A stretch of DNA of 63,994 nucleotides, the filler included, from Ministeria vibrans ATCC 50519 (Eukaryota; Protista; Filasterea), in the NCBI GenBank assembly GCA_943704425.1. It is 4 parts of 4 records of this genome, joined end to end, with 100 filler letters (N's around TTAATTAATTAA, not from the genome) between each part and the next. Parts side by side here need not be neighbours in the genome. Positions count along the whole stretch, not along the records: positions 1 to 29,686 come from CALSCP010000778.1; 3 more parts are not named here. One strand, given 5' to 3'. This document shows, piece by piece, positions 3,748 through 24,588 of this stretch; the first letter of the stretch is position 1; each line of letters begins with the position of its first letter. The notes under the pieces are model-generated. The model did not search any database. It was not told the DNA's origin and worked only from the letters and a program-made list of their open reading frames with translations. Made by a program: the position numbers and the translations under genes.

Positions 3748-6228
3748 TCATTGTTGCACAATCGGAAGACCGTGAGTAGCATTCATATTGGGGGGCACAT
3801 GTCGAGGCCTGCGGACGTCAGGTGAGGGCGTCTCCGGCTCGCGCTGCTCTCGAGGATTACGCACCAGAATGAGGCCGGTAGAGGAAGAGGAGAGAAGGGG
3901 GGTGGAGTGGGACTTGTCATGTGCGAGGGGGGCGACGGAGGGACGCAAGCCGGCGCGACGGTGGTGGGCCAGGAAGTAGGCGCGCGGGCTAGCGTAGAGG
4001 GTGGCACGCGCAGGGAGGAATGGGGTGATGGTATGGTGAACGCGGAGGGCAATGGGGGTCCAAAGGGGTCGTTCGTGAGCAACGAGAACGGCGTGAAAGC
4101 GGCGGGAGGTCTGGTCGAGCTGGGCAAGAGCAGCGGGGGTGTCGTGCAGGAAAGAGAAGATGTGAACGAGAAGCTCGGCGGGCAGGAAGTCAAAGTAGTT
4201 GAGCTTGTGAAGCGGGGGAAGGGCTGCTGAGGTGGAAGGGGTGTGGGCGGAGAGGATGCCTGTTGCACCCAGCACGGTTGTCATGAGGGTGCGCACAAGG
4301 TGATTTGGAAGGAGGGTGGAAGAAAAAAGGGGCTGTTCGGTGACGGGGGAGATGCGTCCGTGAGCGGACCAGTAGGCGCGCAGAGCAAAGCGGTCGTAGG
4401 TAAAGCCGTCGACGGCAACGACCGGATCAACCATAAACTGCCCTGAGATGGGACAGACAAACTGGGCGCGGGCCATGGAAAGGAGAGGCCCCGTGCGTTG
4501 GCTCAGAGGCGTCTCGAGCAGAGCATCACCGGTGGGAGTTGTCGGGTCGACGTCGTCCATGAGATTCTGTGCACATGCGGCTGCAGTAGTGTGCTTGTCG
4601 ACGTTGCCAGTGCGCAAGACGACACAGTTGTGCTGCGCGAGACGCAAACGGCCCTCGACGGCCACGCGACGGGCGCGCTCGAGGGCAAGAGAGGCGTTCG
4701 CGGCGGCTAGGAGCGATTCGAGCTCGCGGAGGGAGCGCGCCTTGTCCTTGCCTGCTGTGGGAGCATGGTTGCGAATACTGGCAGCACGGTCACCAAAGCG
4801 CAGCGTGGAGAGCGTCTGCGAGGTGCAGACGCGTGCGGTGGAGCAGCACACAATGAGGGTGGTGCATGAGTCGGAGCCAAAGGAGTTCTGGAGGATACGC
4901 GTGAGCTTACTGTCGCGGTACGGAATGTGGACATGCGGAACGGGCGCGGCAGTGCGGTCGTGCTTACGACGCTGCTCGAGACGCGTCTGCTTGCTCAGTG
5001 CCTGAATGACGTTGCCGAGCGCGAGCAGCGATGTGTTGATGAACTGCCCTTCGCACTCGCGCTGCGCTGCTTCGTCGCGCAGCCGTCGAAGTTCGCGCTC
5101 GTCGACAACACCATCCAGCGCCCACGACAGGTCGATATCGGTGCTGCTCTGTACCGTCTCTGAGCCGGCCAGATCGACGAGGTACAGTTGGGAGAGGGAA
5201 CGGACGCGACGGGCGCTGTCGTTGCGCTCAAGCGTCACAACGCTGACCGAGTGCGAACGGCTCGAGTGTGCATTGGAGTCCATTTTGGCAGTGAAACGGG
5301 CCTGTTGTGCCTCGGCAAAACGCTGAAGAGCCTCTTCGGGCGATTCAACACGAACCTGGTTGGTGCCGTTGAGGATGAGTCCGCCTTGGCGCGCCGCGTA
5401 CTCGGCCGGGCTCATGTTGCGCGCGTTGGCGTTGGCGACGGTCGGCGTGCGCACCATGAGGCGCACGTTCTCTCGGCTGTACTCGGGGGTGGCAAGCAGG
5501 TCGCGGACCGTCTCGTTGTACACTTCGACGCAGGCAACGTGCACAAAAAAGTCAAGCTCTCCCTGAGCACGCTGACGAGTGAGGGCCACCAGGCGAAACA
5601 CCTCGTTGACGGACTCGTGGGTCATGGCACTCATGGTGTGCGTCTTGCCGGCACCCGTCTGTCCATACGCGACGAGCGAAGCATTGCGCCCGGCGACAAA
5701 CGCTTCAATGACGGGTGTGCAGACGACTGTGTTGATCTCGGCGTCGGGACAGGCCGGCTCAAACACCCGCGCGAACTGGAAGCGTGTCTCGACGTCGACG
5801 CGCTCGCTGTGGCGCGACACCTTGGTCTGACGCACCGTCAGGTGTGTGGCGTTACGCGCAACTGTCATGTCGAGGCTGGGATCGGCGGTGGGTTCGCTGA
5901 GATCCCGTTCGTAGTCGTTGATCGGCCGGAACCGAGCAAAGACGCGTATCCGCTGATCGGCAAGCGCTGCGTCCAACATGACGCCCTCGGCAGAGGCGTA
6001 CAAAGAGTCGTGCATCGAATCAGAGGCAGACAGCGACGGCACAGCGCCATCGTCGCCGTCAAGCCCAAAAGGACCCGCTGGTTCGGGTCGAGTAAGATCA
6101 ATCTCACCCGACTCCACTGCCTCAAGCTCGCCTGCACTCGTAGCCGCGGGAAGAGAAGTCCCCGACTCATCGCCATGGTGTTCATGGACGGGCGTGGTTG
6201 CGTCGACGTTGCTTGCAGATGAAGACAT
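3748..6228 (-). CDS. Kinesin motor protein with C-terminal U-box and F-box domains (intronless, 826 aa)
   Basis: Motor motifs: RVFARFRP, P-loop GQTGAGKT, switch I NAHSSRSH, switch II DLAGSE, HIPYRDSKLTRILQ, TLSTLRFG. Then a short coiled coil, a U-box (FVCPISGQFMVDPVVAVDGFTYDR...SPVTEQPL...LLPNHLVR) and an F-box (FDFLPAELLVHIFSFL...LAQLDQTSRRF). Confidence 0.92.
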   Translation of the reverse strand: MSSSASNVDATTPVHEHHGDESGTSLPAATSAGELEAVESGEIDLTRPEPAGPFGLDGDDGAVPSLSASDSMHDSLYASAEGVMLDAALADQRIRVFARFRPINDYERDLSEPTADPSLDMTVARNATHLTVRQTKVSRHSERVDVETRFQFARVFEPACPDAEINTVVCTPVIEAFVAGRNASLVAYGQTGAGKTHTMSAMTHESVNEVFRLVALTRQRAQGELDFFVHVACVEVYNETVRDLLATPEYSRENVRLMVRTPTVANANARNMSPAEYAARQGGLILNGTNQVRVESPEEALQRFAEAQQARFTAKMDSNAHSSRSHSVSVVTLERNDSARRVRSLSQLYLVDLAGSETVQSSTDIDLSWALDGVVDERELRRLRDEAAQRECEGQFINTSLLALGNVIQALSKQTRLEQRRKHDRTAAPVPHVHIPYRDSKLTRILQNSFGSDSCTTLIVCCSTARVCTSQTLSTLRFGDRAASIRNHAPTAGKDKARSLRELESLLAAANASLALERARRVAVEGRLRLAQHNCVVLRTGNVDKHTTAAACAQNLMDDVDPTTPTGDALLETPLSQRTGPLLSMARAQFVCPISGQFMVDPVVAVDGFTYDRFALRAYWSAHGRISPVTEQPLFSSTLLPNHLVRTLMTTVLGATGILSAHTPSTSAALPPLHKLNYFDFLPAELLVHIFSFLHDTPAALAQLDQTSRRFHAVLVAHERPLWTPIALRVHHTITPFLPARATLYASPRAYFLAHHRRAGLRPSVAPLAHDKSHSTPLLSSSSTGLILVRNPREQREPETPSPDVRRPRHVPPNMNATHGLPIVQQ

Positions 6229-6429
6229 TACAGAAAAATTAATGTTGAATGTGATATGATAACATTTTAGTTTCTTATTTATTATAATTGATTCTTATTA
6301 TTTATCTCATCCAGCCGTAACAACGAACATGCACTCATCGGTCATCGGTCATCGGTGCCTATTCGGCAATCGCTGATTCATCTGAATTGTCTTTGTCACT
6401 CATGATACACTTGATACAAAATAATCATC

Positions 6430-7178
6430 TCAGTAGAACTCCACTGAGTGCAAAAGGGTTCGGCCTATTTCCGTCTGGATCGCCTCGAGAATTTCATCAA
6501 TGTCCTCATCAAGATCGTCGGACTGATCGAGACGCCGACACAGCACAAGGACGTCATTGGCGGCCAGCTCCGCCTCCTGAGGGTTGTCGCGGATCTCCAG
6601 GCCAACAACATGGACCGGCCGCGAGAGCGTCTCCGGCCGGCGCTGCATGTGGTCCACCACTTGGTCAAACACTCGCTCTTCCGCCGTCACGATCACGTCA
6701 AAAAGCTCGCTGGTCGATTGAAAGTGTTCTGGAGACAAAAGGAACGAGGAACGTTTCAGCACTCACACACACACACACACACACACAAAAGCAAATCGTT
6801 CGTTTCCCCACCTGGCGCCTTCTTGACGCTCATATTTCTCTCCAGCAGTGCGAGGATGCCTGTGTCCGAGTACAGCGTCGGGTCCTGCGCCACGAGTGCG
6901 TCGTAGATGTCTTCGTAGGGCGTTCCAAAGTCAAAGCAGTTGGGATCGTCGACGGTCTTTCCCGGCAACCGCACCATGTTGCCCGATCCGTACGACTCGA
7001 CCCGGAACTGGTGATCTCTAGCACCGTTAGACAATGGGGTGGGCGCCAGTGTGCGTGAGCTTCAGCGCGAAATACAAAGCAATGACTGATTTTACCTGAG
7101 TGTTGCGTGAGCACTCATGCTGCGATTCATGTTGCTCGAGCACACCATGGCATATCGGAACTTGGATGGCGTCGACAT
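6430..7178 (-). CDS. SSU72: RNA polymerase II CTD phosphatase Ssu72 (3 coding exons)
   Basis: Catalytic VCSSNMNRSMSAH (CX5R), SYGSGNMVRLPG, FGTPYEDIY, FDVIVTAEERVFDQV, IRDNPQEA, C-terminal HSVEFY. Confidence 0.95.
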
Positions 7179-7417
7179 AGACCTCTGAAAAAAATAAATT
7201 AAAAGTTTAAAAAATAAAACTGTGTGAAGGAGTGAGTAAAATAGTGTCAAAGATATTAACGAGAGTGAGTAGGGAAAGACGGTGTTCAAAGCTCAGTGAC
7301 ACATATATCACACAGTATGGCGTGTGTGCACAGTGCACAATGTACAATCGCTACAGAGGTCGATGGTTGCTCGCAGATGGTAGATCAAGGAAGGATATGG
7401 AATCTCATGATTATGTA

Positions 7418-12362: not shown

Positions 12363-12434
12363 TCAATGCAACGAAGAACCTTTTTTTATATCTTTCTCTT
12401 TTCAAATTTTTCAATTGTCTTTTCATCTCATTGC

Positions 12435-15272
12435 ATGGACGACTCTCAGTCGGGTCCTGACAGACCGGTTGAGGTAGATCGACCCGGCGGAAGCGAGACG
12501 GAGCGTCGTCTGAGGCGACAGCTGCAAAAAATCATTGATGCATTTCAGAAACGTGAGACGGTGTGGAAAGAGGCGGAACAGACGCAGGCGTCGCTCAAAC
12601 GCCAGCTCGACGCCGCCATGGACATTGTCAAGCCACTGCGTGAACGGTTGCAGGCGACCCAAGCGGAGTTGGGGCAGCAAAAACGACGCGAGGCGCAACA
12701 GGAGCAACGCGATCGTTCACGCGACGTCCTCATCCGACAGCTCGAAAGTCGCATACGCGACGCCGACGACGCCGAGAAAAAGCGCGTGGCCGAGTCTACG
12801 ACGATCGATGGCGCGTCGGCAAAAGATCTCAAGCGACGTCTCGTGGAGAGTGAGCGCCTGGCGCGCTCCTACGAGTCAGACCTGGTTGTCGGACAACGAC
12901 TCATTGCCACGCTTCGCGAAAAGAACACAGCGCTGCAGTCTGCCCTCTCCCGTGCCACCGCCGCCACCGCTGCCTCCTCGTCGTCAGCACACGCAACCGA
13001 ATCGGCTCTCGAAGCGCGCATTTCTCAACTCGAAGACGATTTGCGAAGCGAACGATCGCGCGCCAAACGTCTCGCTCACGACCGCGACGTTGCCCAACGA
13101 GCGCTCGATGCTGCACGAGATCAGGTTGCGTCTTTGCAAGTATCTCAATACGCCACCGGTAGCAGCAGCAGCAGCAGCAGCGGCGGCGGTGGTGGTGGTG
13201 GTGGTGGCGGTGGCTTAACAGCCCTGAGTCAAGCGTCACCGTCGAGCTCGGTGCTGTCCTCCACCGTCTCTCCCAACTCTACCATCGCACACACGTCCAC
13301 CACGCGCATTCCCACAAAGGTGTGCCTTGAACTCATCACGAGCAGCGAGAGTGAGAGTGAGAGTGAGGAGAACGGGAGGAGTGGAAGTGAGAGTGTAAGT
13401 GAGAGCCGCGACAAGCAGCACGATGCGACCCACCTCGTCAAGCCCGTCGTTGTCAAGGCCCAACCAACGGCGAGTCAACAATGGAAACGGCTTCGAGCGG
13501 ACGTCTCAAGCAAACGCCTTGTTGACAGCAGTGACGACGATGAAATCAGCCCTGTCAGCAAGTCAACGGTGAAGCTGGTGCCGCGACGCAAACGCCAACG
13601 TACCATCCCCGCCGCCACGACCACTAGTACGACCACAGCAACAGCGACAGTTGATGCGCCGTTTGCCATCTTTGACGACGACGACGACGACAACAACAAC
13701 AGCAATAACAGCCGCCAGGACACTCCGACTGCAACACGGTGCCGTGTTGATGCCGCCGAACATGACCTCGACTTGTCGTCGTCGTCAGCCGACGAGGAGT
13801 CTGAGCTCAGCGACTCAGGGTGCTTCCTTCGATGGCCACACACAGACACAACTATCACTGCTACTGTCTCAACTACTACGACCGCCACCGCTACTACTAC
13901 TGCAGCGCTGTCGGAAGTGAACTGCAGCGGTGATGATGAGAGAGAGGCCGAGGGCGAGGAGGGTATTGTGTTTAGTGAGGGCGATTGGGCCTTTCCCTGG
14001 CCGGCCGTGCGCGAGACCATCCGCTTTATGGCAAGTAGCCAACGCCATCCGGAGCTTAGTGTGCCCTTTGAAGCGAGCGGACTCGATGACACGTCCAAGT
14101 CCTTGCTAGATTCGCCACCCTGGTGGGTGCTCACGCCCGCCAGTGCCATTCTTGCGCGCGTGGTTGTGCCCTCGTCACAGACCGACTGTGTCGAAGGGCT
14201 CTGGCGCACGCGAGTGCCGTCCACCAATGATCCTCTCATGTTCACCCGTGTCCTCATTCATCACCTGGGTCTCGACTCGTCTGCGTCCCTCACTCACATC
14301 TACCGTCTTGCATCCTTCACCCGTGCACTGTTTCCCTCTGATGTGCTCCTGCGTCACAGCACAAGTGCCATTGCGATGCTTCTTCTTGGCTCAGAGCCCA
14401 CTCAGAGTGCTCTCATGCGACGACTGTGCCAGTTTCATGCGTGCCTTGCCCGTCTCACCCGTTCCCTCCAAGCTGCACATGCCCTTTTTCATCGTCTTGT
14501 GATGGGCTCACGCAGTGGACTAGCACCTCTCATGGCCTCCTATGCCTATGTGTGGCCACGCGCAGTGCGTGCCAACACCTCTGGCTTTGTCGCGACCGTC
14601 CAGCGCGTTGTATTGCAACAGGTCGCCTGTGAAGACGACACGGAGGAGAGCGAAGAGTCACTGGCGCTGCTTGAGCGTCGTTGTGCCTGGCCTGTGTCTG
14701 CAGTGCAGCTCAAGGATGACGATAGTGCCGTGGTGAGTGCGCTGGTGGAGTCGCTTTCTTGTGGTGTGCGGGTGCGCAGTGCTTGTCGTGCTCTTGACAT
14801 GCTCGGCGTGCACTTTGGCGCAGACTTTGCCTGTCGTGTTCTGTTGCAAGACCACGTTTGGCCGCGCGTGAAGGATTGCGTAGCCAAGTGGCTTGCAGGT
14901 GACGACGAAAACGACGGAGGAGGCGTAGGGAGCGCTGATGATGATGATGATAATGCAACACGAGAGGAGATCAAGTGTGCTGTAGCGCTCATGATGCTCG
15001 CCGGGGATCTTGTGTTCCACGCACGTCCGACATCTCACAGTGCCACCGCTGTGATTGTCCATGAATGGGCTACGCTGGTACGCACAGCACTGACGGGTCT
15101 GCTGCGCTGTGCCGAGCAGCATCGTATCCCTCTCTCGGTGCGCACCACTGTCTGTGATGTGCTTGTGAAGCTCTCCGCCGGAGACCCAGCCCACCTCGCG
15201 CCTGCGCGTCTTTGGTTTGATGCACAAACGACTGCGACACGCGAAAACTGTCGTTTAGCGGTGCTTTTGTAA
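12435..15272 (+). CDS. Large intronless protein: N-terminal coiled coil, Ser/Thr/Asp low-complexity middle, helical C-terminal domain; function unknown
   Basis: About 945 open codons with coding-like GC content; heptad-rich first ~230 aa; probable NLS PRRKRQR. The ATG at 12435 follows a short AT-rich spacer after the ABCD stop. Confidence 0.75.
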   Translation: MDDSQSGPDRPVEVDRPGGSETERRLRRQLQKIIDAFQKRETVWKEAEQTQASLKRQLDAAMDIVKPLRERLQATQAELGQQKRREAQQEQRDRSRDVLIRQLESRIRDADDAEKKRVAESTTIDGASAKDLKRRLVESERLARSYESDLVVGQRLIATLREKNTALQSALSRATAATAASSSSAHATESALEARISQLEDDLRSERSRAKRLAHDRDVAQRALDAARDQVASLQVSQYATGSSSSSSSGGGGGGGGGGGLTALSQASPSSSVLSSTVSPNSTIAHTSTTRIPTKVCLELITSSESESESEENGRSGSESVSESRDKQHDATHLVKPVVVKAQPTASQQWKRLRADVSSKRLVDSSDDDEISPVSKSTVKLVPRRKRQRTIPAATTTSTTTATATVDAPFAIFDDDDDDNNNSNNSRQDTPTATRCRVDAAEHDLDLSSSSADEESELSDSGCFLRWPHTDTTITATVSTTTTATATTTAALSEVNCSGDDEREAEGEEGIVFSEGDWAFPWPAVRETIRFMASSQRHPELSVPFEASGLDDTSKSLLDSPPWWVLTPASAILARVVVPSSQTDCVEGLWRTRVPSTNDPLMFTRVLIHHLGLDSSASLTHIYRLASFTRALFPSDVLLRHSTSAIAMLLLGSEPTQSALMRRLCQFHACLARLTRSLQAAHALFHRLVMGSRSGLAPLMASYAYVWPRAVRANTSGFVATVQRVVLQQVACEDDTEESEESLALLERRCAWPVSAVQLKDDDSAVVSALVESLSCGVRVRSACRALDMLGVHFGADFACRVLLQDHVWPRVKDCVAKWLAGDDENDGGGVGSADDDDDNATREEIKCAVALMMLAGDLVFHARPTSHSATAVIVHEWATLVRTALTGLLRCAEQHRIPLSVRTTVCDVLVKLSAGDPAHLAPARLWFDAQTTATRENCRLAVLL

Positions 15273-17093: not shown

Positions 17094-20000
17094 ATGCTTC
17101 GCTTTGCTCTCCACGTCACTATTGTGTGCGGTCTTCTCGTCAGCCAGACGACTGCCTGTAAGAGCCCCGCCTCCCCTCCCAGAGCTGCCCATTCCCCTTC
17201 AGAGATCCTCTCCTGCATCGCCAACGCCTCTCTTCTTCGCTTCTGTCGTTTTCAGCTCTGGCGTAAATGGCTATTTTTTGAACTGTTCGTCGAACAAATA
17301 TGGAAAAAATCCCTATCGCGTCGCTCCTTTACGTCTCCCTTCTCTTCCCGATCCTTGAAAACACCGAATACAACCGTGTGTCGATGTGGAGTTCTCGCGT
17401 ATGCCCTCGTCGTGGCGTTGTTTTTTTTGGTGAAGATAACGTTCGTGATCTCACCTCCGACATCCTCCGCATTGCATCGATGCACTGCCCCCGGACGTCC
17501 GCCCCGTGCCACGCCTCACTGTAATCGTGACCCCCCTCACCTCTCCCTGTGTTGTCTGTAGCCTCCTGCGGGTCCTTCTCGCTCGACGCAACCAATGCTG
17601 ACGACGTCATTGCCTCAATCAGTACTTGCGTCTTCAGCATCGTCGATAGCCTCACCATCCACGGTCCCACGTCTCTCACACACTTTGTCATGCCTCCGTA
17701 AGTGTATTGTATCTCCGTGTGCAGTCTTTGTCTCTGTGCGTCGAGTCGTCTCCAGTCATCATCGCTCAACCCTTTGATTATCTCGTTGACAGAGGCATCA
17801 GTGCCATCGGCGGCGACGTCATTGTGGGCGACACAACGGACTTGATCAGTGTTGACTTCAACAACGTCTCCAGCTTCGGCGGCGATGTCAAGGTGACCAA
17901 CAACTCGGCGTTGACAACGGTGGATTTGGCGGTGGCAGACACAGTGTCGGGCACCTTCGAGCTGTACAACAACTTTCTGGTTGACACGGTGCTACTGAAC
18001 TCCCTTGCGACTGTCGAGGAGGCCTTCAACATCACCGAGAACGCCGCTCTGACGCAACTGCTGCTTCCAAGCATCGTTGCGCTCGATGGCGACGTGTCGA
18101 TTGTCGACAATGCCGCTCTCGTGGCCCTCAACGGCAGTGCTTTCCTCGCCGTCTTCTGCAACACGGAGAACACCGAGTGCACAGTGCGCATCGATCGAAA
18201 CGCTGAACTCGTCTCACTGACGCTGTTCAAGCCGTTCCTGACCAGTCCTCTTGAGCCCTTCTCCGAAAGTCGTGTCCTTCATCTCCACGTCAACTCCAAC
18301 CTCAAACTCCCCTCCCTTGAGCCCTTTTCCTACTTTGACGGTCACGTTGGCACTTTGGAGTTGTCTTACCTCTCAGTTCAAGAGTAATGAAAAAAAAAAT
18401 AAGACAATGAGAAATGTGTGACTGACAAGGTCTCTTGTTTGCGTAGTCTGACTCCATTGTCGTCGCTGGACAGTGTGGGCGAGTCGCTCACCATCAAAAA
18501 CATGCAGCAACTCTCCTCGCTGGCGGGCCTCAGCACTCTGCTCGTCACCAGCTCCCTCAAGACCCTTGAGCTCGAGGATCTGCCTCTCATTTTCTCTCTC
18601 GCTTCTTTTCTCACTGTCGCCACCGGTCCCGAAAACGCAAACGACCTTCACATCTCCATTTCTGCTCTCGCAGGTTTGACGTCTAGCTCTGCGCTGGATG
18701 ACCTAGATAATCTCTTCAACATCGTAAGAATACCGAGGGAATAAAAATTTAATACCGAGGGGAATAAGAAGCAGAACTGCATACAAAAATGCTCATTCTT
18801 AATATTTTTGATTTGTTAGGTGAAGCGTATTGAACTGAACGACATCCCAGTGTTCCCACTGGAAATGGGCACATTCACACTGAACCCTGGCGAAGTGGAG
18901 CTTCGCAACATTGACACAACGAGCGTTGGGTTTGTCTCTGTGCGTTTTCCCTCTCTCACCGAACTCATCATTGCGCAATGTGACCTGCTCTCCAATCTGA
19001 CCACTTGGACGTCGTCGAGCGTCACACAGCTCACACTCGCAAACAACGCACTTCTCACCTCCCTCGAGGGTCTCTCTTTCCCCGGCAACACAGCGCAACG
19101 CATCCTCATCAAGAATAACCCCGTTCTCACGGACCTCGATGCCCTCCTCTCCGTCACGGTTATTGAGGAAGCGCTTGAGGTAAGACTCATCTACTCCTCT
19201 TCTTACACACACTCACACTCTCTATCACGTTGTTTCTCCCTCACTCTCACTCTCTCTCACTCACTCACTCACTCACTCACGCTCTCTATCACTTTGTTTC
19301 TCCCTCCCTCCCTCCTCTCTCTCCTCTCCCTCACTCTCTCTCTCTATCTCTTTTTTTTTTTTCTTCTTCTCTCGCTTGCCTTGTTGTAGATTGATGGAAA
19401 CCTTCAGCTGACGTCGCTGCAGGGTCTGAGCAGCGTCACGCGCGTCGGCACACTGCCGGGGGAAGGCGATGCGGGTGTTGGGACATTGTACATTGCCAAC
19501 AATGATGCGTTGCTCGACGTTAACATGACCAGTCTGCAGCATGTGGGCAGCGACGGATCGTCGAACTACGGCACTCTCTTCCTCTCCAACAACAACCTTT
19601 TGCCCTCCCTCGCCGGTTTGTCTGGGTTTAATGGGATCATTGGCACACTCATCATCGACAACAACGACAAGCTCGCAAGTCTCCATGGCCTGCACAATGT
19701 TGCCGATGTACGTGAGCTGCTCAACATCACCAACAATAGCTTGTTGGACATGCCCCCGGCGTCCTGTGCATTACCTCTCTCGGGTGCTTCAACACGTAAG
19801 ACCACAATTCAAAAAAAAAAGTCAAACTAACAAACCAATATCAAACAAACACACTTTTTAGTGAAAGATCTTTATGTGGTAAACAACCCATCGCTTGTGG
19901 TGATGCGCTGCTTCAACGCCTACACTTCCATCGACAATGTGAATGTCGTGGACAACGCCGCCCTCACCACCATCATCTCATTCAACAATGTCCCGAGCAT

Positions 20001-23000
20001 GAATCACTTGCGGGTCAAGGGTAACCCTGAACTCACCACCTTCGACGCCATCTTGTCCACCGGCAGCCTCCTGACGCTTGACTCGCTCATCCTCATCGAC
20101 AACCCCAAGCTCACCAGTCTGACTTTCTTCTCGTCGATCACTGATCTCGGAGAGACCGGATCGTCCCAGGAGTACTCGCTCTACCTCGAGGGTCTCGACC
20201 TCATCGAAGATCTGTCCTTTCTCTCGACCGTCCAGGTCTTTAGCGACGGCAACATTTTCCTGCGCACCATGAATATCCAGTCGCTCTTTGCCAACCTCAC
20301 ATATCCACCGACGCTCACCAACGTTGGCATTGCCGCACAACACTGCCCTCTCCTCGAGCGTCTCGACCTTCCCCCAACCACCGCGACGCTGCGACACCTC
20401 CAGTTGCAACACCTTGACAGTTTTGTTGAAATCCCTGCGCTTGCGGGTCCCACGCCCTTTATCTTTGGCGACGTCGAGTTCCGCAACCTTGCCGTGTGGA
20501 ACCCTACGGTGTACGCACACACTCCCATTTCGGTGCAGGGTGCCCTTGAAATCACGAGCAACCCGGCCCTGTGGTCGCTCTACTTCATCCGCAGCTTCAG
20601 CGACGCTAGCTCCATCGTGCTGCAGTACAACACTGGCCTCGTCGACATCAGCGACCTCTCCTCGGTCATTTCGTACAACTCACTGAAGCTGCTCGACAAC
20701 CCCGAAATCCTCGTGGCCACTGGTCTCTCGCCGGTGCCCACCAAGGCCTTCGAACTCGAGGTGCAGCGCAACAACAAGCTGACACAACTCGAGGGATTCA
20801 ATGCTGCCGTTGAGTTTAGCGGCGTCGTCATCAAAGACAATGCCCTGCTCAACGCTATTGACATTGCTGACAGTGCGCCCGACTTCAACAGCGTTACCGT
20901 CACAAACTTGCCCAATCTTGAGAGCTTGGTCATGTTCGACGCGGCTCTCAACGGCAGCTACATTGAGGTGTCGAGTCTTGCCAAACTCGCCTCCATGGTG
21001 GCCTTCCCCTTCCTCACTTCCCTCGCCGGCAACCTCCAAGTATCCATGCTCGATGTGCTGCCCCGCTTCAACAGCTCCTTTTCGCGCATCAAGAATGTCA
21101 TCGGGAACATCGATTTGATCGACAATTCTCTGCTCGAAGCCGCCTCCTTTGACGACCTCGAGACGGTCGGCAAACGACTGCGCGTCAAAAACTGCGATGC
21201 TATCACGGCCGTTGCCTTTCCCATGCTCAACGAAGCCAACCTGTTGGTCGTCTCCGAGTGTAACAACCTGAAAAAAGTTGAGCTTGATTCGCTTCCCTCG
21301 GTCAGCTCGGGACTCCACATGCGCGACAACCCTCAGTTTCTCAGTCTAACCGCGCCCTTGCTCACATCGGTGGGGCTTGGGGCGAGCACTGAGTTTGATG
21401 GGGGCAGCGAGTCGTGCCGTGACATTATCGTGAGCAATCTTTGTGCGCCATCAAACGCCGCGTGTACTTCGTGTGGTGGCTCCAGCGCCTGCAAAGGTGG
21501 CTGTCCCAGCAACGGCTGCAACTTGTGTCAGGGAACCCACGGCCTCTGGTTCGTGGCCTTGCCCAAGCTCGACAAAATAGTTCTACCGTCGCTCCTCACC
21601 GTCTCACAATTGTTCTTCCTCGACACGGGTCTGCTCGAGCCGCGCGGCCTCGAGGCAGTCACCACCATCAACGGTGTCTTCGAAGTGTACGACAACCAGA
21701 AAATGTTCACACTGGCACCTTTGAAAGGTCTTGTTACGGTGAACGAACTGGTGGTTGCGTCCAACCCGGACCTGTGCTTCAATGCGACGCGCTGGGCGCC
21801 CATCTCGACGGACCCACCACAGGTGAGTGATGTCATTGACGCCAACACCAACACGGTGTGTCTTCTGGAGGAGTTGTCGACCGCCAACACTCAGCCGGGC
21901 AGCGAAGCCGAGGCCGAGACGCTCGTGGACCTGGTGCTCGTTGCCATGGGCGGCGAGGCAGGCACGTGGGCAACGGACGCGTCACATTTGGAGGCGGGGG
22001 CAGTTGAGAACAACCTTATTGCGTCGCTCGAGGGTGTCACCAACTATACGAAGAACGAGGCGGAGGCGAGCGGCATGGTGTCGACGACGCTCATTTCCTC
22101 GACCGGTTCCGCCATCAAAAACATCTTTTTGCCCGCGAGTATGACGCGCATGCGCTCGGCGGGCGTCTCCAATCGCATTCCCGCCGTGGTTGCGTCGTAT
22201 GCGGTCGCCGTGGCCAAGACTCTGCCCTGCGGCTCCAACACAACGCTGAGTGGCAGTGACGTTGATGTGAGTGCCGTGCGCAAGTTTCCAAGCGACCTGG
22301 CGGGTGTTTTCACATCGACGGGCGTGCAGTTTCAAGTGCCTCTCAACTTTACGAAGACACTCAATGCGAGCACGTGTCAAACGGTGGAGTTCAGTACGTT
22401 TGTGACGGATCCATATGTGCCGGTGCAGACACAGACGATCCGCTCGAGCGTTGTTGTGTTCAGCGTAGACGGCACGACAGTGAGCAACCTGACTGAGTCG
22501 GAGGCGTTCGTATTTACGTTGACGCACACGTCTACGGGTTCGACAGGCGATGTATACGCGTGTGTGTGGTGGGACAGGGACACGACACTGTGGACAACGA
22601 GCGGTTGCGAGGTGGTTGCGTCGACGACTACGTCGACAACGTGCCGCTGCAACCACTTGACGTCTTTTGCAGTGCTGCTCGACGTTAATGGCTCCAGCCA
22701 ACTTGCGGGTCTCGAGGTGCTCACCTATGTCGGTTGTGCCCTCTCCATGATTGGTGCAGTCATTTATATTTTGACGTTTTCGATTTTGCGCTCGCTTGCG
22801 ACTGGCCCCACCTATCTCGTGATGAATCTGTGTGTGGCCATCTTTTTTACCAATCTGGTCTTTTTGGTTGGCATTGATCGCACAAGCAATGTGTCGGCGT
22901 GCACCGCCTCGGCCGCCTTCCTCTACTTCTTCCTCATGGCCTGCTTCTGCTGGATGTTGTGTCTCTCGTACCAGCTCTACGGCATGCTCGTGCAGCTCAA

Positions 23001-24588
23001 TGTGTCGTCAGGCAAGGCGTCGCTCAAGCCCTACCTGCTGTTTGGTTGGGGCACGCCCCTGGCGCTGATGGTGGTGCTGGTGATTGCAAATGCAGCAAGT
23101 GGCGGTGCAGTGGAGCTGGGCAACACGACCAACTGCTGGATTGGGTCGCAGGGGGCGCTCATTGGTGCCTTTCTTGTACCCGTACTCATTGTCATTGTGA
23201 TCAACATGATTGTGTTTGGGCTGGCAGTGCGCTCGATGGAGACGAACCGACGTGCGCAGAAGGGTCGCTCGGGTCCGAACGCGAGCGGCAATCATCGTCA
23301 GACCATGATTGTGTACGTGAGTCTGCTGCTGACGCTTGGCTTCACTTGGCTCTTTGGCTACCTGGCCATTGTGTCGACGGCTGTCTTCTGGTACCCGTTT
23401 GTCATTTTCAACTCGGCGCAGGGCCTTCTGCTCTGCCTTGTGTACTGCTTCCGCTCGCGTGTGCGTGACGCGTGGCGCGTGTACTTGGGGATGGATCGGT
23501 CGCAACCGAGCAAGAGCGACAAGAGCAAGGGTACCAAGTCAACGGGTGTCTCGACCGGCACCAAGAATGCGAATGGTAGCAGCGGCGGTGGTGGTCGCAG
23601 CGGTGTGATATCTGGCGTGATGCGCAGCTCGACTATGGGCGCAGGTGATAGCAGCAGTCGGGCCATGTCGAGTGTGGCGGTGGCCATACACGGACCGGAT
23701 ACGCCCGAGGCGCACCGACGCAACACGGAGGAGATTGAGTTGGACTGCCTGAGCGACACACACAGTGGCGAACATTTGCTGTCGGAGAAGACGCGCGGCA
23801 AAAACAAGAACAACGACAAGTATGGGTTTGCGACGACGGACGTGACCGAGTCGATGATGGACGAGTTTGAACAACATCCCGAACTGTACGGCATAGCAAC
23901 GCCCGCCGACACGGTCGAGGACGATCAGACGTTTGCGCGGGACGAGCCGACATGGACAACGGATGAGCCGTCGCCGTTTGACGCGGACGCGCAACGCGGA
24001 TACATTCGTACGGGTGACGTGACGCAGTCGATGGTGGAGGATTTTAATATGAATCCGTCGCGCTACTTTGACAATGGCGGTGAGTCGGGACGATCGAGTA
24101 CCGGTGGCGTTTCGGTTGACATGAAGAGTGTCGGCAAGGGCGGAACACTCAAGTCGCACAAGGGGGGCAAGGCAAAGAGCAAGCCGGCGACACTGTCTGC
24201 GGCGACTGGCGAGCGACGTCAGTCATTGAGTGGCAAGAGCGAAAGGTCGACAGCGGCAGACGAGCTGCTGTTTGCGGGTATGGCGGACGTCCGGGGTGCC
24301 TACAATACACGCGAGTGGGCCAACCCCATTATGGGCGATGGAGCAGGCTCGGCGTCGTCTGTGCCCGCGCCACCAGCCATTGTGACCACTGTGGACAGTG
24401 GCAGTGCCCTAGCCAGTCCCCCACGTCCGCGCCAGGCCCGTCTGAGCGCCACCATGGACGCTTCGCCGCTCATGGCCGCCGCACACGCACTTGGCGAGAG
24501 TGTGGCTGCCATTATGAGTCCTAAAGTGTCTCCGACGACAAAGAGACGACCTATCACTAGCCCGCCCAGTTCCAACTCGATCAAGTAG
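17094..24588 (+). CDS. Adhesion GPCR: signal peptide, many receptor-L-domain/LRR-like repeats, GAIN/GPS, secretin-type 7TM, long cytoplasmic tail
   Basis: Signal MLRFALHVTIVCGLLVSQTTA then a GTAAGA donor. Many L-x-I-x-x-N-x-x-L-x-x-L repeats over several exons. GPS CVWWD...WTTSGC...CRCNHL/TSFAVLL (~22561-22680). TM segments LTYVGCALS, NLCVAIF, ACFCWM, FGWGTP, CWI, LLLTLGFTWLFG, FNSAQG. Ends at TAG 24586-24588. Confidence 0.93.

What the first reader, a model, noticed from the sequence alone, without database searches (positions are those of the whole stretch)
3748..6228. Kinesin fused to both a U-box and an F-box: a possible motor-driven ubiquitin ligase
Seen: one uninterrupted ORF with an intact motor (P-loop, switch I and II), a coiled coil, a U-box (~4270-4465) and an F-box (~4080-4200). 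Known: U-boxes recruit E2~ubiquitin directly, whereas F-boxes bind Skp1 in SCF ligases, so these are two separate routes to ubiquitylation. I do not recall this three-domain architecture in described kinesin families. Inference: a microtubule motor that carries or positions E3 activity, for example at the flagellar tip or spindle, or that limits its own lifetime. It is intronless among intron-rich genes, which hints at a retroposed or chimeric origin. The fusion does not depend on any splice prediction.
Basis: partly seen in the sequence, partly recalled or inferred. Interest (0 to 1): 0.85.

Follow-up and report, generated by a model that had tools for sequence, protein, structure and literature searches.

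The report
Kinesin with U-box and F-box tail
This is a real, intact gene for a microtubule motor whose tail carries two ubiquitin-ligase modules (a U-box and an F-box). It is not a one-off chimera but a member of a widespread, apparently unstudied protist kinesin family that was not detected in animals, fungi or plants.

Summary
Window 3748-6228 (minus strand) is one uninterrupted 826-aa ORF. Pfam places a kinesin motor (residues 99-485, E 6e-72), a U-box (589-646, 37.2 bits against a cut-off of 21.4) and an F-box-like domain (680-724, 32.9 against 24.3), all above the curated cut-offs.

AlphaFold2 and structure searches confirm a U-box fold (rmsd about 1.2 A to plant PUB and CHIP U-boxes). 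They give moderate support for an F-box fold (Z about 7 to the F-box parts of FBXO3 and FBXO31 in their Skp1 complexes). A homodimer model of the stalk plus U-box passed its controls (0.50 against 0.00).

The architecture is not unique to this genome. The same order recurs at about 30% identity in Amoebozoa, Heterolobosea, Hemimastigophora and dinoflagellates: motor, coiled coil, U-box, F-box, then a conserved near-C-terminal S-[KR]-G-L-x-L-[FV] motif. A ciliate and a chromerid carry a version without the U-box.

The motor is most like kinesin-1 but falls outside the kinesin-1 clade. I found no paper that describes the fusion.

E3 activity, Skp1 binding and motility remain inferences. Read laying failed, so the transcript was not checked.

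The parts
3748..6228 (-). Complete single-exon coding sequence (826 codons plus stop at 3748-3750)
   Evidence: ORF list; one search gives a stop-to-stop frame of 848 aa; one search shows it is single-copy in the 29.7-Mb assembly.
5947..6228 (-). N-terminal extension (residues 1-94), mostly disordered and low in complexity
   Evidence: pLDDT is 31-47 across residues 1-90 in the whole-protein AlphaFold2 model. This region is not conserved in the family alignment.
4759..5946 (-). Kinesin motor domain (residues 95-490), closest to kinesin-1, with lengthened loops around helix alpha4 (L11 and L12)
   Evidence: Pfam Kinesin E 6.4e-72. The best solved relatives are kinesin-1 heavy chains, E 4e-38. 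pLDDT is mostly 90 or more.
5641..5664 (-). P-loop GQTGAGKT (residues 189-196)
   Evidence: Invariant columns G189 Q190 T191 G194 K195 in the 43-sequence alignment.
5251..5265 (-). Switch I SSRSH (residues 322-326)
   Evidence: S322, S323, R324 and H326 are invariant and S325 nearly invariant.
5158..5175 (-). Switch II DLAGSE (residues 352-357)
   Evidence: Invariant columns D352-E357.
4609..4734 (-). Neck and stalk coiled coil (residues ~499-540), the predicted dimerisation helix
   Evidence: Helix 500-540 at pLDDT about 95. In the homodimer model the contacts run from 499 to 538 at 3-4 residue spacing.
4264..4473 (-). U-box domain (residues ~586-655; Pfam core 589-646)
   Evidence: Pfam 37.2 bits. 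phmmer to the PUB12 U-box gives E 1.5e-9. Foldseek to 7xed gives TM 0.84, rmsd 1.2 A. VIA-align gives Z 10.8. pLDDT is 92-97. The U-box pair also forms part of the dimer interface.
3952..4206 (-). F-box plus following helices (residues ~675-759; Pfam core 680-724)
   Evidence: Pfam F-box-like 32.9 bits. VIA-align matches the F-box parts of FBXO3 in its SKP1 complex (Z 7.0) and of FBXO31 in its Skp1 complex (Z 6.8). pLDDT is about 70-85.
3856..3882 (-). Conserved near-C-terminal motif S-[KR]-G-L-x-L-[FV]-x-P (here S-T-G-L-I-L-V-R-N, residues 783-791)
   Evidence: G785 is kept in 40 of 43 sequences, L786 in 36 and L788 in 40. The motif also occurs in U-box-less relatives. It is modelled as a short strand (786-788); the 781-790 block has pLDDT about 71 in the whole-protein model against 50 in the tail-only model.

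Best explanation
The ORF is a genuine, single-copy, single-exon gene. It encodes a member of an old and widespread but unnamed kinesin family.

The protein has an N-terminal motor closest to kinesin-1, with a kinesin-1-like neck-linker sequence. This predicts movement towards microtubule plus ends. A roughly 40-residue coiled coil follows and makes a parallel homodimer, which brings the two U-boxes together as in CHIP-type U-box dimers.

The tail then carries an F-box and a conserved terminal S-K/R-G-L-x-L-F/V motif. There is no WD40, LRR or other substrate-binding domain.

The most likely mechanism is that the motor places ubiquitin-ligase activity on microtubules, most likely towards their plus ends. 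The dimeric U-box would recruit a charged E2 directly. The F-box would dock Skp1, and through it possibly a cullin-RING core. The motor and stalk would supply the targeting that a substrate-binding domain supplies in ordinary F-box proteins.

Shown: the domains, their folds, conservation of the family, presence of the partner genes, and a modelled dimer. Inferred: direction of movement, E2 and Skp1 binding, ligase activity and substrates.
For: **Domains and folds**
- All three domains score above the Pfam cut-offs.
- All 43 aligned relatives carry Kinesin and U-box; 20 score as F-box-like and 10 as F-box at E <= 0.01.
- The rest align in register across the F-box.
- U-box fold: 7xed TM 0.84, rmsd 1.2 A; CHIP U-box TM 0.84; Z 10.8.
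- F-box fold: Z 7.0 and 6.8 to the F-box segments of FBXO3 and FBXO31, both solved bound to Skp1.

**Conservation**
- Invariant U-box residues are C592, P593, P602, D607, G608, R613, S627 and P628.
- The family has members in Balamuthia, Stenamoeba, Phalansterium, Nematostelium, Acrasis, Hemimastix, Polykrikos, Yihiella, Symbiodinium and Amphidinium.
- Profile scores show a clean gap: tailed members score 636-921 bits, and other kinesins 599 bits or less.

**Motor and dimer**
- The nearest solved motors are kinesin-1 heavy chains, and the alignment runs through the neck-linker start.
- Homodimer model of residues 485-660: score 0.50, best of three controls 0.00. The runs agree in at least 54% of contacts, and partner pLDDT is at least 63.
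- That mark was reached by 17 of 29 eukaryote proteins solved as homodimers and by 0 of 30 solved as single chains. The pass may come from memory of solved U-box dimers.

**Genome context**
- The genome encodes Skp1, cullins and many F-box genes.
- The DNA stretch is held at 0.99 of its sampled words in an independent 2022 study. It is held at 0.91-0.93 in four runs under a second organism label.
Against: - No biochemical or expression evidence exists.
- F-box support is weaker than U-box support. A single-sequence search against solved structures gives only E 0.39 to the Fbxw7 F-box. Z about 7 is in the range the tool warns can be a common helical arrangement.
- The window protein sits on a very long branch (1.46 changes per column) and is not placed with support.
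- The branch uniting all tailed kinesins is weak (73/84), and four tail-less sequences lie inside that group.
- Two routes to ubiquitylation in one polypeptide have no characterised precedent that I know of, so how they cooperate is speculation.
Confidence: 0.6

Rival explanations
1. Self-regulating motor. The U-box, F-box and terminal GLxL motif act mainly on the kinesin itself, through autoubiquitylation, SCF-dependent turnover or tail-to-head autoinhibition. They would limit when and for how long the motor is active, for example once per cell cycle, and would not ubiquitylate other substrates.
For: - No substrate-binding domain follows the F-box.
- The near-C-terminal S-K/R-G-L-x-L-F/V motif is the best-conserved tail feature and also survives in relatives without a U-box.
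- The 10-residue block around the motif rises from pLDDT 50 to about 71, and a short strand (786-788) appears, only when the motor is present in the model. This is compatible with a contact outside the tail.
- From general knowledge, F-box proteins are commonly autoubiquitylated, and kinesin-1 is autoinhibited by a short tail motif.
Against:
- Conservation of the whole E2-binding surface across very distant lineages fits a catalytic role at least as well.
- Self-regulation and substrate targeting are not mutually exclusive.
Confidence: 0.22
2. Non-catalytic tail. The U-box and F-box are kept only as protein-binding or dimerisation modules with no ligase output. For example, the U-box would act as a dimer clamp and the F-box as a Skp1 adaptor in a non-SCF complex.
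For: - The U-box pair contributes much of the modelled dimer interface (residues 604-610 and 638-655).
- Dinoflagellate members have lost the canonical Leu-Pro start of the F-box, and only 20 of 43 members score as F-box-like.
- From general knowledge, non-SCF Skp1/F-box complexes exist, such as Ctf13 in the yeast kinetochore CBF3 complex and Rcy1.
Against: - The residues that are invariant across the family include the two loops that contact E2 in solved U-box-E2 complexes (C-P-I and S-P). The closest structures are themselves E2 complexes.
- A pure dimer clamp would not need those loops to be conserved.
Confidence: 0.13
3. Lineage-specific chimera, retrogene or assembly mis-join. Unrelated kinesin and E3 pieces would have been joined recently in this genome, or only in its assembly.
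For: - The ORF is intronless, while Skp1 and the adjacent Ssu72 gene are split.
- The protein sits on a long branch.
Against: - The same order of motor, coiled coil, U-box, F-box and GLxL motif is found in at least four other deep lineages.
- The stretch is held nearly complete in independent studies.
- Other long intronless ORFs are common in this genome.
- The gene is single-copy with no parental copy elsewhere in the assembly.
Confidence: 0.02

Closest known systems
Kinesin-1 (conventional kinesin heavy chain, KIF5/KHC)
   Same: - N-terminal motor whose best solved matches are kinesin-1 heavy chains (E 4e-38 to 1e-34).
- The next-best database hits after the tailed family are mostly fungal and animal KHCs.
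- A kinesin-1-like neck-linker start is followed by a dimerising coiled coil.
   Different: - It falls outside the kinesin-1 clade, which has 15 rows and support 96/86.
- The stalk is short (about 40 residues).
- No Pfam-recognisable kinesin-1 tail domain was detected; the tail is instead a U-box plus an F-box.
- Loops L11 and L12 are lengthened.
CHIP/STUB1 and plant PUB U-box E3 ligases
   Same: - U-box fold with rmsd 1.1-1.7 A and 26-37% identity.
- A coiled coil lies ahead of a U-box that is modelled as a symmetric dimer, as in CHIP (2c2l, 2f42).
   Different: The substrate-selecting part is a microtubule motor in place of TPR or armadillo repeats, and an F-box follows the U-box.
F-box proteins of SCF ligases (FBXO class, such as FBXO3 and FBXO31)
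   Same: - F-box-like Pfam match above the cut-off.
- Structural match to the F-box segments of FBXO3 and FBXO31, both solved with Skp1.
- Skp1 and cullins are present in the genome.
   Different: - The F-box lies near the C-terminus, not ahead of a substrate-binding domain.
- No WD40, LRR or other receptor domain is present.
- Skp1 binding is untested.
IFT172 C-terminal U-box-like domain (eLife 2026, PMC13290226, seen)
   Same: It is a U-box-type module that travels on microtubule-motor machinery. By its title and abstract, it links intraflagellar transport to ubiquitin.
   Different: - There the U-box-like domain sits on a cargo-adaptor complex and is described as ubiquitin-binding.
- Here a canonical U-box is fused to the motor itself.
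- The family here is also not restricted to ciliated organisms.
Monosiga 'F-BOX-KISc' kinesin (paralogue group X12) in Wickstead et al. 2010, PMC2867816
   Same: It is the only kinesin with an F-box recorded in that 45-genome survey.
   Different: - The F-box is N-terminal to the motor and there is no U-box.
- No relationship to the present family was tested.

Membership tests
Kinesin superfamily | Motor domain with P-loop, switch I, switch II and the microtubule-binding elements | tested here: met
   Pfam Kinesin 242.7 bits across the full 327-position model. The motifs are invariant in the alignment. The motor is modelled at pLDDT 90 or more.
Kinesin-1 family | Motor groups inside the kinesin-1 clade in a motor-domain phylogeny | tested here: not met
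   The careful IQ-TREE run (59 rows) gives a kinesin-1 clade of 15 rows (96/86) that excludes the window protein and all tailed kinesins. Caveats: the window row has a long branch, and reference families other than kinesin-1 and kinesin-4 were not sampled.
Kinesin-1 family | Long stalk and a tail with the light-chain-binding region and the IAK autoinhibitory motif | tested here: inconclusive
   Pfam finds only U-box and F-box-like domains after the motor, and the stalk helix is about 40 residues. No Pfam-recognisable kinesin-1 tail was detected, but the IAK motif and the light-chain-binding region were not searched for specifically.
U-box E3 ubiquitin ligases | U-box fold (a RING-like fold without zinc ligands) recognised by profile and by structure | tested here: met
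   PF04564 scores 37.2 bits against a cut-off of 21.4. Foldseek gives TM 0.84-0.87 and rmsd 1.1-1.2 A to PUB U-boxes. VIA-align gives Z 10.8.
U-box E3 ubiquitin ligases | Conserved E2-contact loops (the Ile of C-P-I and the Pro of S/C-P-x-T) | tested here: met
   C592, P593, S627 and P628 are invariant across 43 sequences; position 594 is I, L or V. The mapping onto CHIP I235 and P269 is from my own knowledge, not from a tool.
U-box E3 ubiquitin ligases | E2-dependent ubiquitin transfer | not testable with these tools
   This needs a biochemical assay.
F-box proteins (SCF substrate receptors) | F-box motif recognised by profile | tested here: met
   PF12937 scores 32.9 bits against a cut-off of 24.3, E 5.6e-8, and 37.7 bits in the six-frame genome search.
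F-box proteins (SCF substrate receptors) | Three-helix F-box fold | tested here: inconclusive
   Z 7.0 (rmsd 2.7 A, 72 residues aligned) to FBXO3 residues 11-84, and Z 6.8 to FBXO31 residues 64-143. The right segments are matched, but Z is below the level the tool treats as safe for helical folds. pLDDT is about 70-85.
F-box proteins (SCF substrate receptors) | Binding to Skp1 | not tested
   The genome's Skp1 is split into several exons.
F-box proteins (SCF substrate receptors) | A substrate-binding domain (WD40, LRR or other) beside the F-box | tested here: not met
   No such Pfam domain occurs in this protein or in the 43 relatives. After the F-box helices the tail is disordered apart from the GLxL motif.
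U-box/F-box-tailed kinesins (unnamed family defined here) | Motor, short coiled coil, U-box, F-box and the near-C-terminal S-K/R-G-L-x-L-F/V motif, in that order | tested here: met
   All five elements align in register with members from Amoebozoa, Heterolobosea and dinoflagellates. Profile scores separate the family from other kinesins.

The most novel reading that the evidence does not exclude
A kinesin family of deep, possibly last-eukaryotic-common-ancestor age physically couples microtubule motility to two ubiquitylation routes: direct E2 recruitment by a dimeric U-box, and Skp1/SCF docking by an F-box. It has been overlooked because animals, fungi and plants lost it. Its conserved terminal GLxL motif would be a new regulatory or cargo-binding element.
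Probability: 0.4. Interest if true: 0.8.

Novelty: new variant of a known kind. Interest (0 to 1): 0.62.

Why it matters
Kinesin tails normally bind cargo; a tail that is itself a ubiquitin ligase would be a different way of using a motor. It would deliver or concentrate a protein-modifying enzyme at defined places on the microtubule network.

The family spans Amoebozoa, Discoba, alveolates, Hemimastigophora and this marine protist. It may therefore add a member to the ancestral eukaryotic kinesin set reconstructed in earlier surveys, where no U-box kinesin was recorded (PMC2867816).

It also offers a natural case of a U-box and an F-box in one polypeptide. That makes the question of whether the two routes cooperate, for instance in an E4-like way, directly testable with a small recombinant tail.

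The value here is as a lead. Everything about function is inferred from sequence and models.

Tried and rejected
1. **Laying reads to check the transcript and the junctions.** No letters of 7187-7222 were sent to any search tool afterwards.
3. **Region-restricted homologue search with the tail only (residues 575-800).** It returned nothing at E <= 0.001. This reflects the word index and the database size, not absence, because the index-free search did recover family members.
4. **Index-free search with the 250-aa tail.** Of the best 150 hits listed, 148 were new, and most were U-box proteins with more than one matched stretch. Only four short proteins (P0146, P0169, P0220, P0224) showed U-box plus family-type F-box without a motor. 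At least P0220 and P0146 begin inside the post-motor coiled coil, so I take them for fragments. They do not show that a free-standing module exists.
5. **Skp1-F-box complex prediction.** It was left out because the genome's Skp1 is split into exons of about 26-64 residues.
6. **Monophyly of U-box kinesins alone.** It is rejected by the trees: 6 changes are needed, at least 3-4 of them forced. Adding the F-box-only relatives puts all tailed proteins on one side of a weakly supported branch.
7. **Cilium-specific role.** This genome does have IFT57, but the family also occurs in amoebae that, from general knowledge, lack flagella.
8. **Identifying the organism.** The assembly is 29.7 Mb in 2860 contigs. 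Its DNA also turns up in seawater and algal metagenomes.
Full report
**1. Observation**

Window 3748-6228 on the minus strand is one uninterrupted ORF of 826 codons with an ATG start. The stop-to-stop frame is 848 codons.

Pfam hmmscan finds four families above their curated cut-offs:
- Kinesin, residues 99-485, 242.7 bits, E 6.4e-72.
- Microtub_bd, which overlaps the motor.
- U-box PF04564, residues 589-646, 37.2 bits against 21.4.
- F-box-like PF12937, residues 680-724, 32.9 bits against 24.3.

The P-loop, switch I and switch II are present and sit in invariant columns of a 43-sequence family alignment.

**2. Structure**

AlphaFold2 on residues 500-826 with the family alignment gives:
- a long helix (model residues 2-41, that is protein 501-540) with 10-residue block means of 95-97 pLDDT over its first 30 residues;
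- a disordered linker;
- a U-box at pLDDT 92-97;
- a helical F-box region at about 70-75;
- a disordered tail.

The U-box matches solved structures closely:
- Foldseek against the PDB gives TM 0.84 and rmsd 1.2 A to the OsCIE1 U-box solved with its E2 (7xed).
- It gives TM 0.87 to the GmPUB13 U-box, and CHIP U-boxes score similarly.
- Sequence search of solved structures agrees: PUB12 U-box at E 1.5e-9, and CHIP at 2e-5.

An all-against-representatives structural search gives Z 10.8 for the U-box. For model residues 176-260 it picks out the F-box segments of FBXO3 (Z 7.0, in its SKP1 complex) and FBXO31 (Z 6.8, in its Skp1 complex). The right segments are hit, but the Z values lie in the range the tool warns can reflect a common helical arrangement. 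I count the F-box fold as moderately supported, with the Pfam score as the main evidence.

The whole-protein model shows a well-formed motor at pLDDT mostly 90 or more. It has a disordered N-terminal 86-90 residues and an extended helix at 377-423 that includes the lengthened loop ahead of alpha4.

A homodimer prediction for residues 485-660 passed its controls:
- The score was 0.50 and the best of three controls 0.00.
- The runs agree in at least 54% of contacts, and partner pLDDT is at least 63.
- The mark was reached by 17 of 29 eukaryote proteins solved as homodimers and by 0 of 30 solved as single chains.
- The tool warns that a pass may come from memory of solved U-box dimers.

The interface is a parallel coiled coil (contacts from 499 to 538 at 3-4 residue spacing) plus a symmetric U-box pair (604-610, 638-655). 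This is the arrangement known from CHIP.

**3. Relatives**

The first homologue search showed no close relative; the best is 31-36% identical. It did show dozens of proteins with the same Pfam string, Kinesin + U-box, with or without F-box-like.

Cluster look-ups name the sources:
- Amoebozoa: Balamuthia mandrillaris, Stenamoeba, Phalansterium, Nematostelium.
- Heterolobosea: Acrasis kona.
- Hemimastigophora: Hemimastix.
- Dinoflagellates: Polykrikos, Yihiella, Symbiodinium, Amphidinium.
- Many unnamed metagenome contigs.

Scanning all 43 aligned members gives Kinesin in 43 of 43, U-box in 43 of 43, F-box-like in 20 and F-box in 10.

The alignment shows that the members without a Pfam F-box hit, mostly dinoflagellates, still align in register through the F-box. 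They share the ...SFLD..SL.R......W..LL..DF pattern but have lost the leading Leu-Pro.

Two further shared features tie the family together:
- A proline-rich L-P-D-L-x-P linker between the U-box and the F-box.
- A near-C-terminal motif S-[KR]-G-L-x-L-[FV]-x-P. G is kept in 40 of 43 sequences and the two leucines in 36 and 40, and the motif usually lies 7-17 residues from the end.

A profile built from the family separates tailed members (636-921 bits) from everything else. The next hit is a Lutzomyia-labelled entry at 599 bits; the rest, including kinesin-1, score 537 or less.

**4. A U-box-less branch**

An HMM of the family's F-box region also hits a set of kinesins of about 590 aa that have no U-box. 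These keep the F-box and the terminal G-[LIV]-x-L-F motif. They include the ciliate Blepharisma stoltei and the chromerid Vitrella brassicaformis. The constant core of the wider family is therefore motor, coiled coil, F-box and GLxL motif. The U-box is present in most lineages but absent in that branch.

**5. Phylogeny of the motor**

The best solved matches are kinesin-1 heavy chains. After the tailed family, the next-best database hits are mostly kinesin-1.

In a careful IQ-TREE analysis of 59 motors, kinesin-1 proper forms a clade (96/86) that excludes all tailed kinesins. All 35 tail-positive rows lie on the other side of a weak branch (73/84), together with six rows scored as tail-less. 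Two of those six (P0082, P0087) do carry the tail by eye.

The window protein has a very long branch (1.46) and is not placed with support. I therefore call the motor kinesin-1-like but not a kinesin-1. Monophyly of the tailed family is plausible and unproven.

**6. Genome context**

- The assembly is 29.7 Mb in 2860 contigs, and the gene is single-copy.
- Skp1 is present at two strong loci plus a paralogue. Cullins (several loci), at least 36 other F-box loci and only three other U-box loci are also present.
- IFT57 is present, so the organism builds cilia.
- Skp1 is cut into small exons.
- The ORF just upstream on the same strand (6430-6762) is only the C-terminal half of Ssu72 (Pfam positions 88-189), so that gene is split too.
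- Other kinesin loci show open frames of 1338-1625 aa, and the window has ORFs of 968 and 1575 aa. A 2.5-kb intronless ORF is therefore not exceptional here.
- The 2.8-kb stretch is held at 0.99 of its sampled words in an independent 2022 study of the same organism label. It is held at 0.91-0.93 in four 2025 runs of a second label, and partly in seawater and algal metagenomes.

Together with the conserved architecture elsewhere, this rules out a mis-join or a recent chimera for practical purposes.

**7. What could not be done**

No read-level check of the transcript exists, and those places were not sent to any search tool afterwards.
- The Skp1-F-box complex was not modelled, because it would have needed a joined Skp1. 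That step is left out.
- Model coordinates are not exposed, so I could not see what the GLxL strand touches in the whole-protein model.

**8. Mechanism**

Shown:
- an intact motor;
- a modelled dimerising coiled coil;
- a canonical U-box with its E2-contact loops invariant across the family;
- an F-box with a canonical start in this protein;
- no substrate-binding domain;
- a conserved terminal motif;
- the partner machinery in the genome.

Inferred:
- The protein is a plus-end-directed homodimer.
- Its paired U-boxes recruit charged E2.
- Its F-box docks Skp1.
- The motor supplies the spatial targeting.

Rivals are a mainly self-regulatory tail, a non-catalytic scaffold tail, and a chimera or artefact. 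The last is effectively excluded.

**9. Literature**

Six full-text searches (and the supplement search) found no description of a kinesin fused to a U-box. The 45-genome kinesin survey of Wickstead et al. 2010 (PMC2867816) records no U-box kinesin. Its only F-box kinesin is an N-terminal F-box form in Monosiga. The architecture is visible in database annotations, but as far as these searches reach it is unnamed and unstudied.

**10. Verdict**

The gene is real and the architecture is supported. The fusion is ancient and widespread and did not arise as a local accident. Its function as a motor-borne ubiquitin ligase is a good but untested inference. It is a new variant of known kinds (kinesin, U-box E3, F-box protein) and a worthwhile lead for kinesin and ubiquitin specialists.

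Noticed in passing
P0037, P0045, P0054, P0057, P0063, P0066, P0069, P0070, P0072, P0082, P0087, P0088: A sister set of kinesins of about 590 aa keeps the family's F-box and terminal G-[LIV]-x-L-F motif but has no U-box. It includes the ciliate Blepharisma stoltei and the chromerid Vitrella brassicaformis. The U-box was therefore either lost there or added later elsewhere.
   Followed up: partly
window 3856-3882 (-), residues 783-791; family alignment A1: The near-C-terminal motif S-[KR]-G-L-x-L-[FV]-x-P is almost invariant across the family, and I could not link it to any known binding partner. It is modelled as a short strand. The 10-residue block around it has pLDDT about 71 in the whole-protein model against 50 in the tail-only model, which hints at a contact outside the tail.
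   Followed up: partly
window 6430-6762 (-): This ORF encodes only the C-terminal half of an Ssu72-like phosphatase (Pfam positions 88-189, E 1.4e-30). Its stop lies about 200 bp upstream of the kinesin start on the same strand, so the intergenic spacer is very short. The Ssu72 gene must have at least one intron.
   Followed up: partly
window 19861-24588 (+): A 1575-aa uninterrupted ORF encodes an adhesion-type GPCR, with a GPS motif (E 2.8e-13) followed by a secretin-family 7TM domain (E 5.2e-42).
   Followed up: no
window 12366-15272 (+): A 968-aa uninterrupted ORF has no Pfam match at E <= 0.01.
   Followed up: no
P0110: One metagenomic family member carries ankyrin repeats N-terminal to the motor, as well as the C-terminal U-box. 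This shows further domain accretion within the family.
   Followed up: no
P0319, Cladorrhinum sp.: A fungal entry annotated as kinesin heavy chain has a full ubiquitin-conjugating (E2) domain (E 5.9e-51) N-terminal to the motor. It may be a gene-model fusion, or an independent link between a kinesin and the ubiquitin system.
   Followed up: no
P0146, P0169, P0220, P0224: Four short proteins (190-301 aa) have U-box plus the family-type F-box but no motor. At least two start inside the post-motor coiled coil and look like fragments of full kinesins from short contigs.
   Followed up: partly
L002 and L011 (G000 contigs C173 and C2018); window ORF list near 6387-7058: Long (CA)n, (GA)n and (TA)n microsatellites fill introns and spacers in this genome. 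They show up as TH, RE and YI dipeptide runs in the ORF translations.
   Followed up: no
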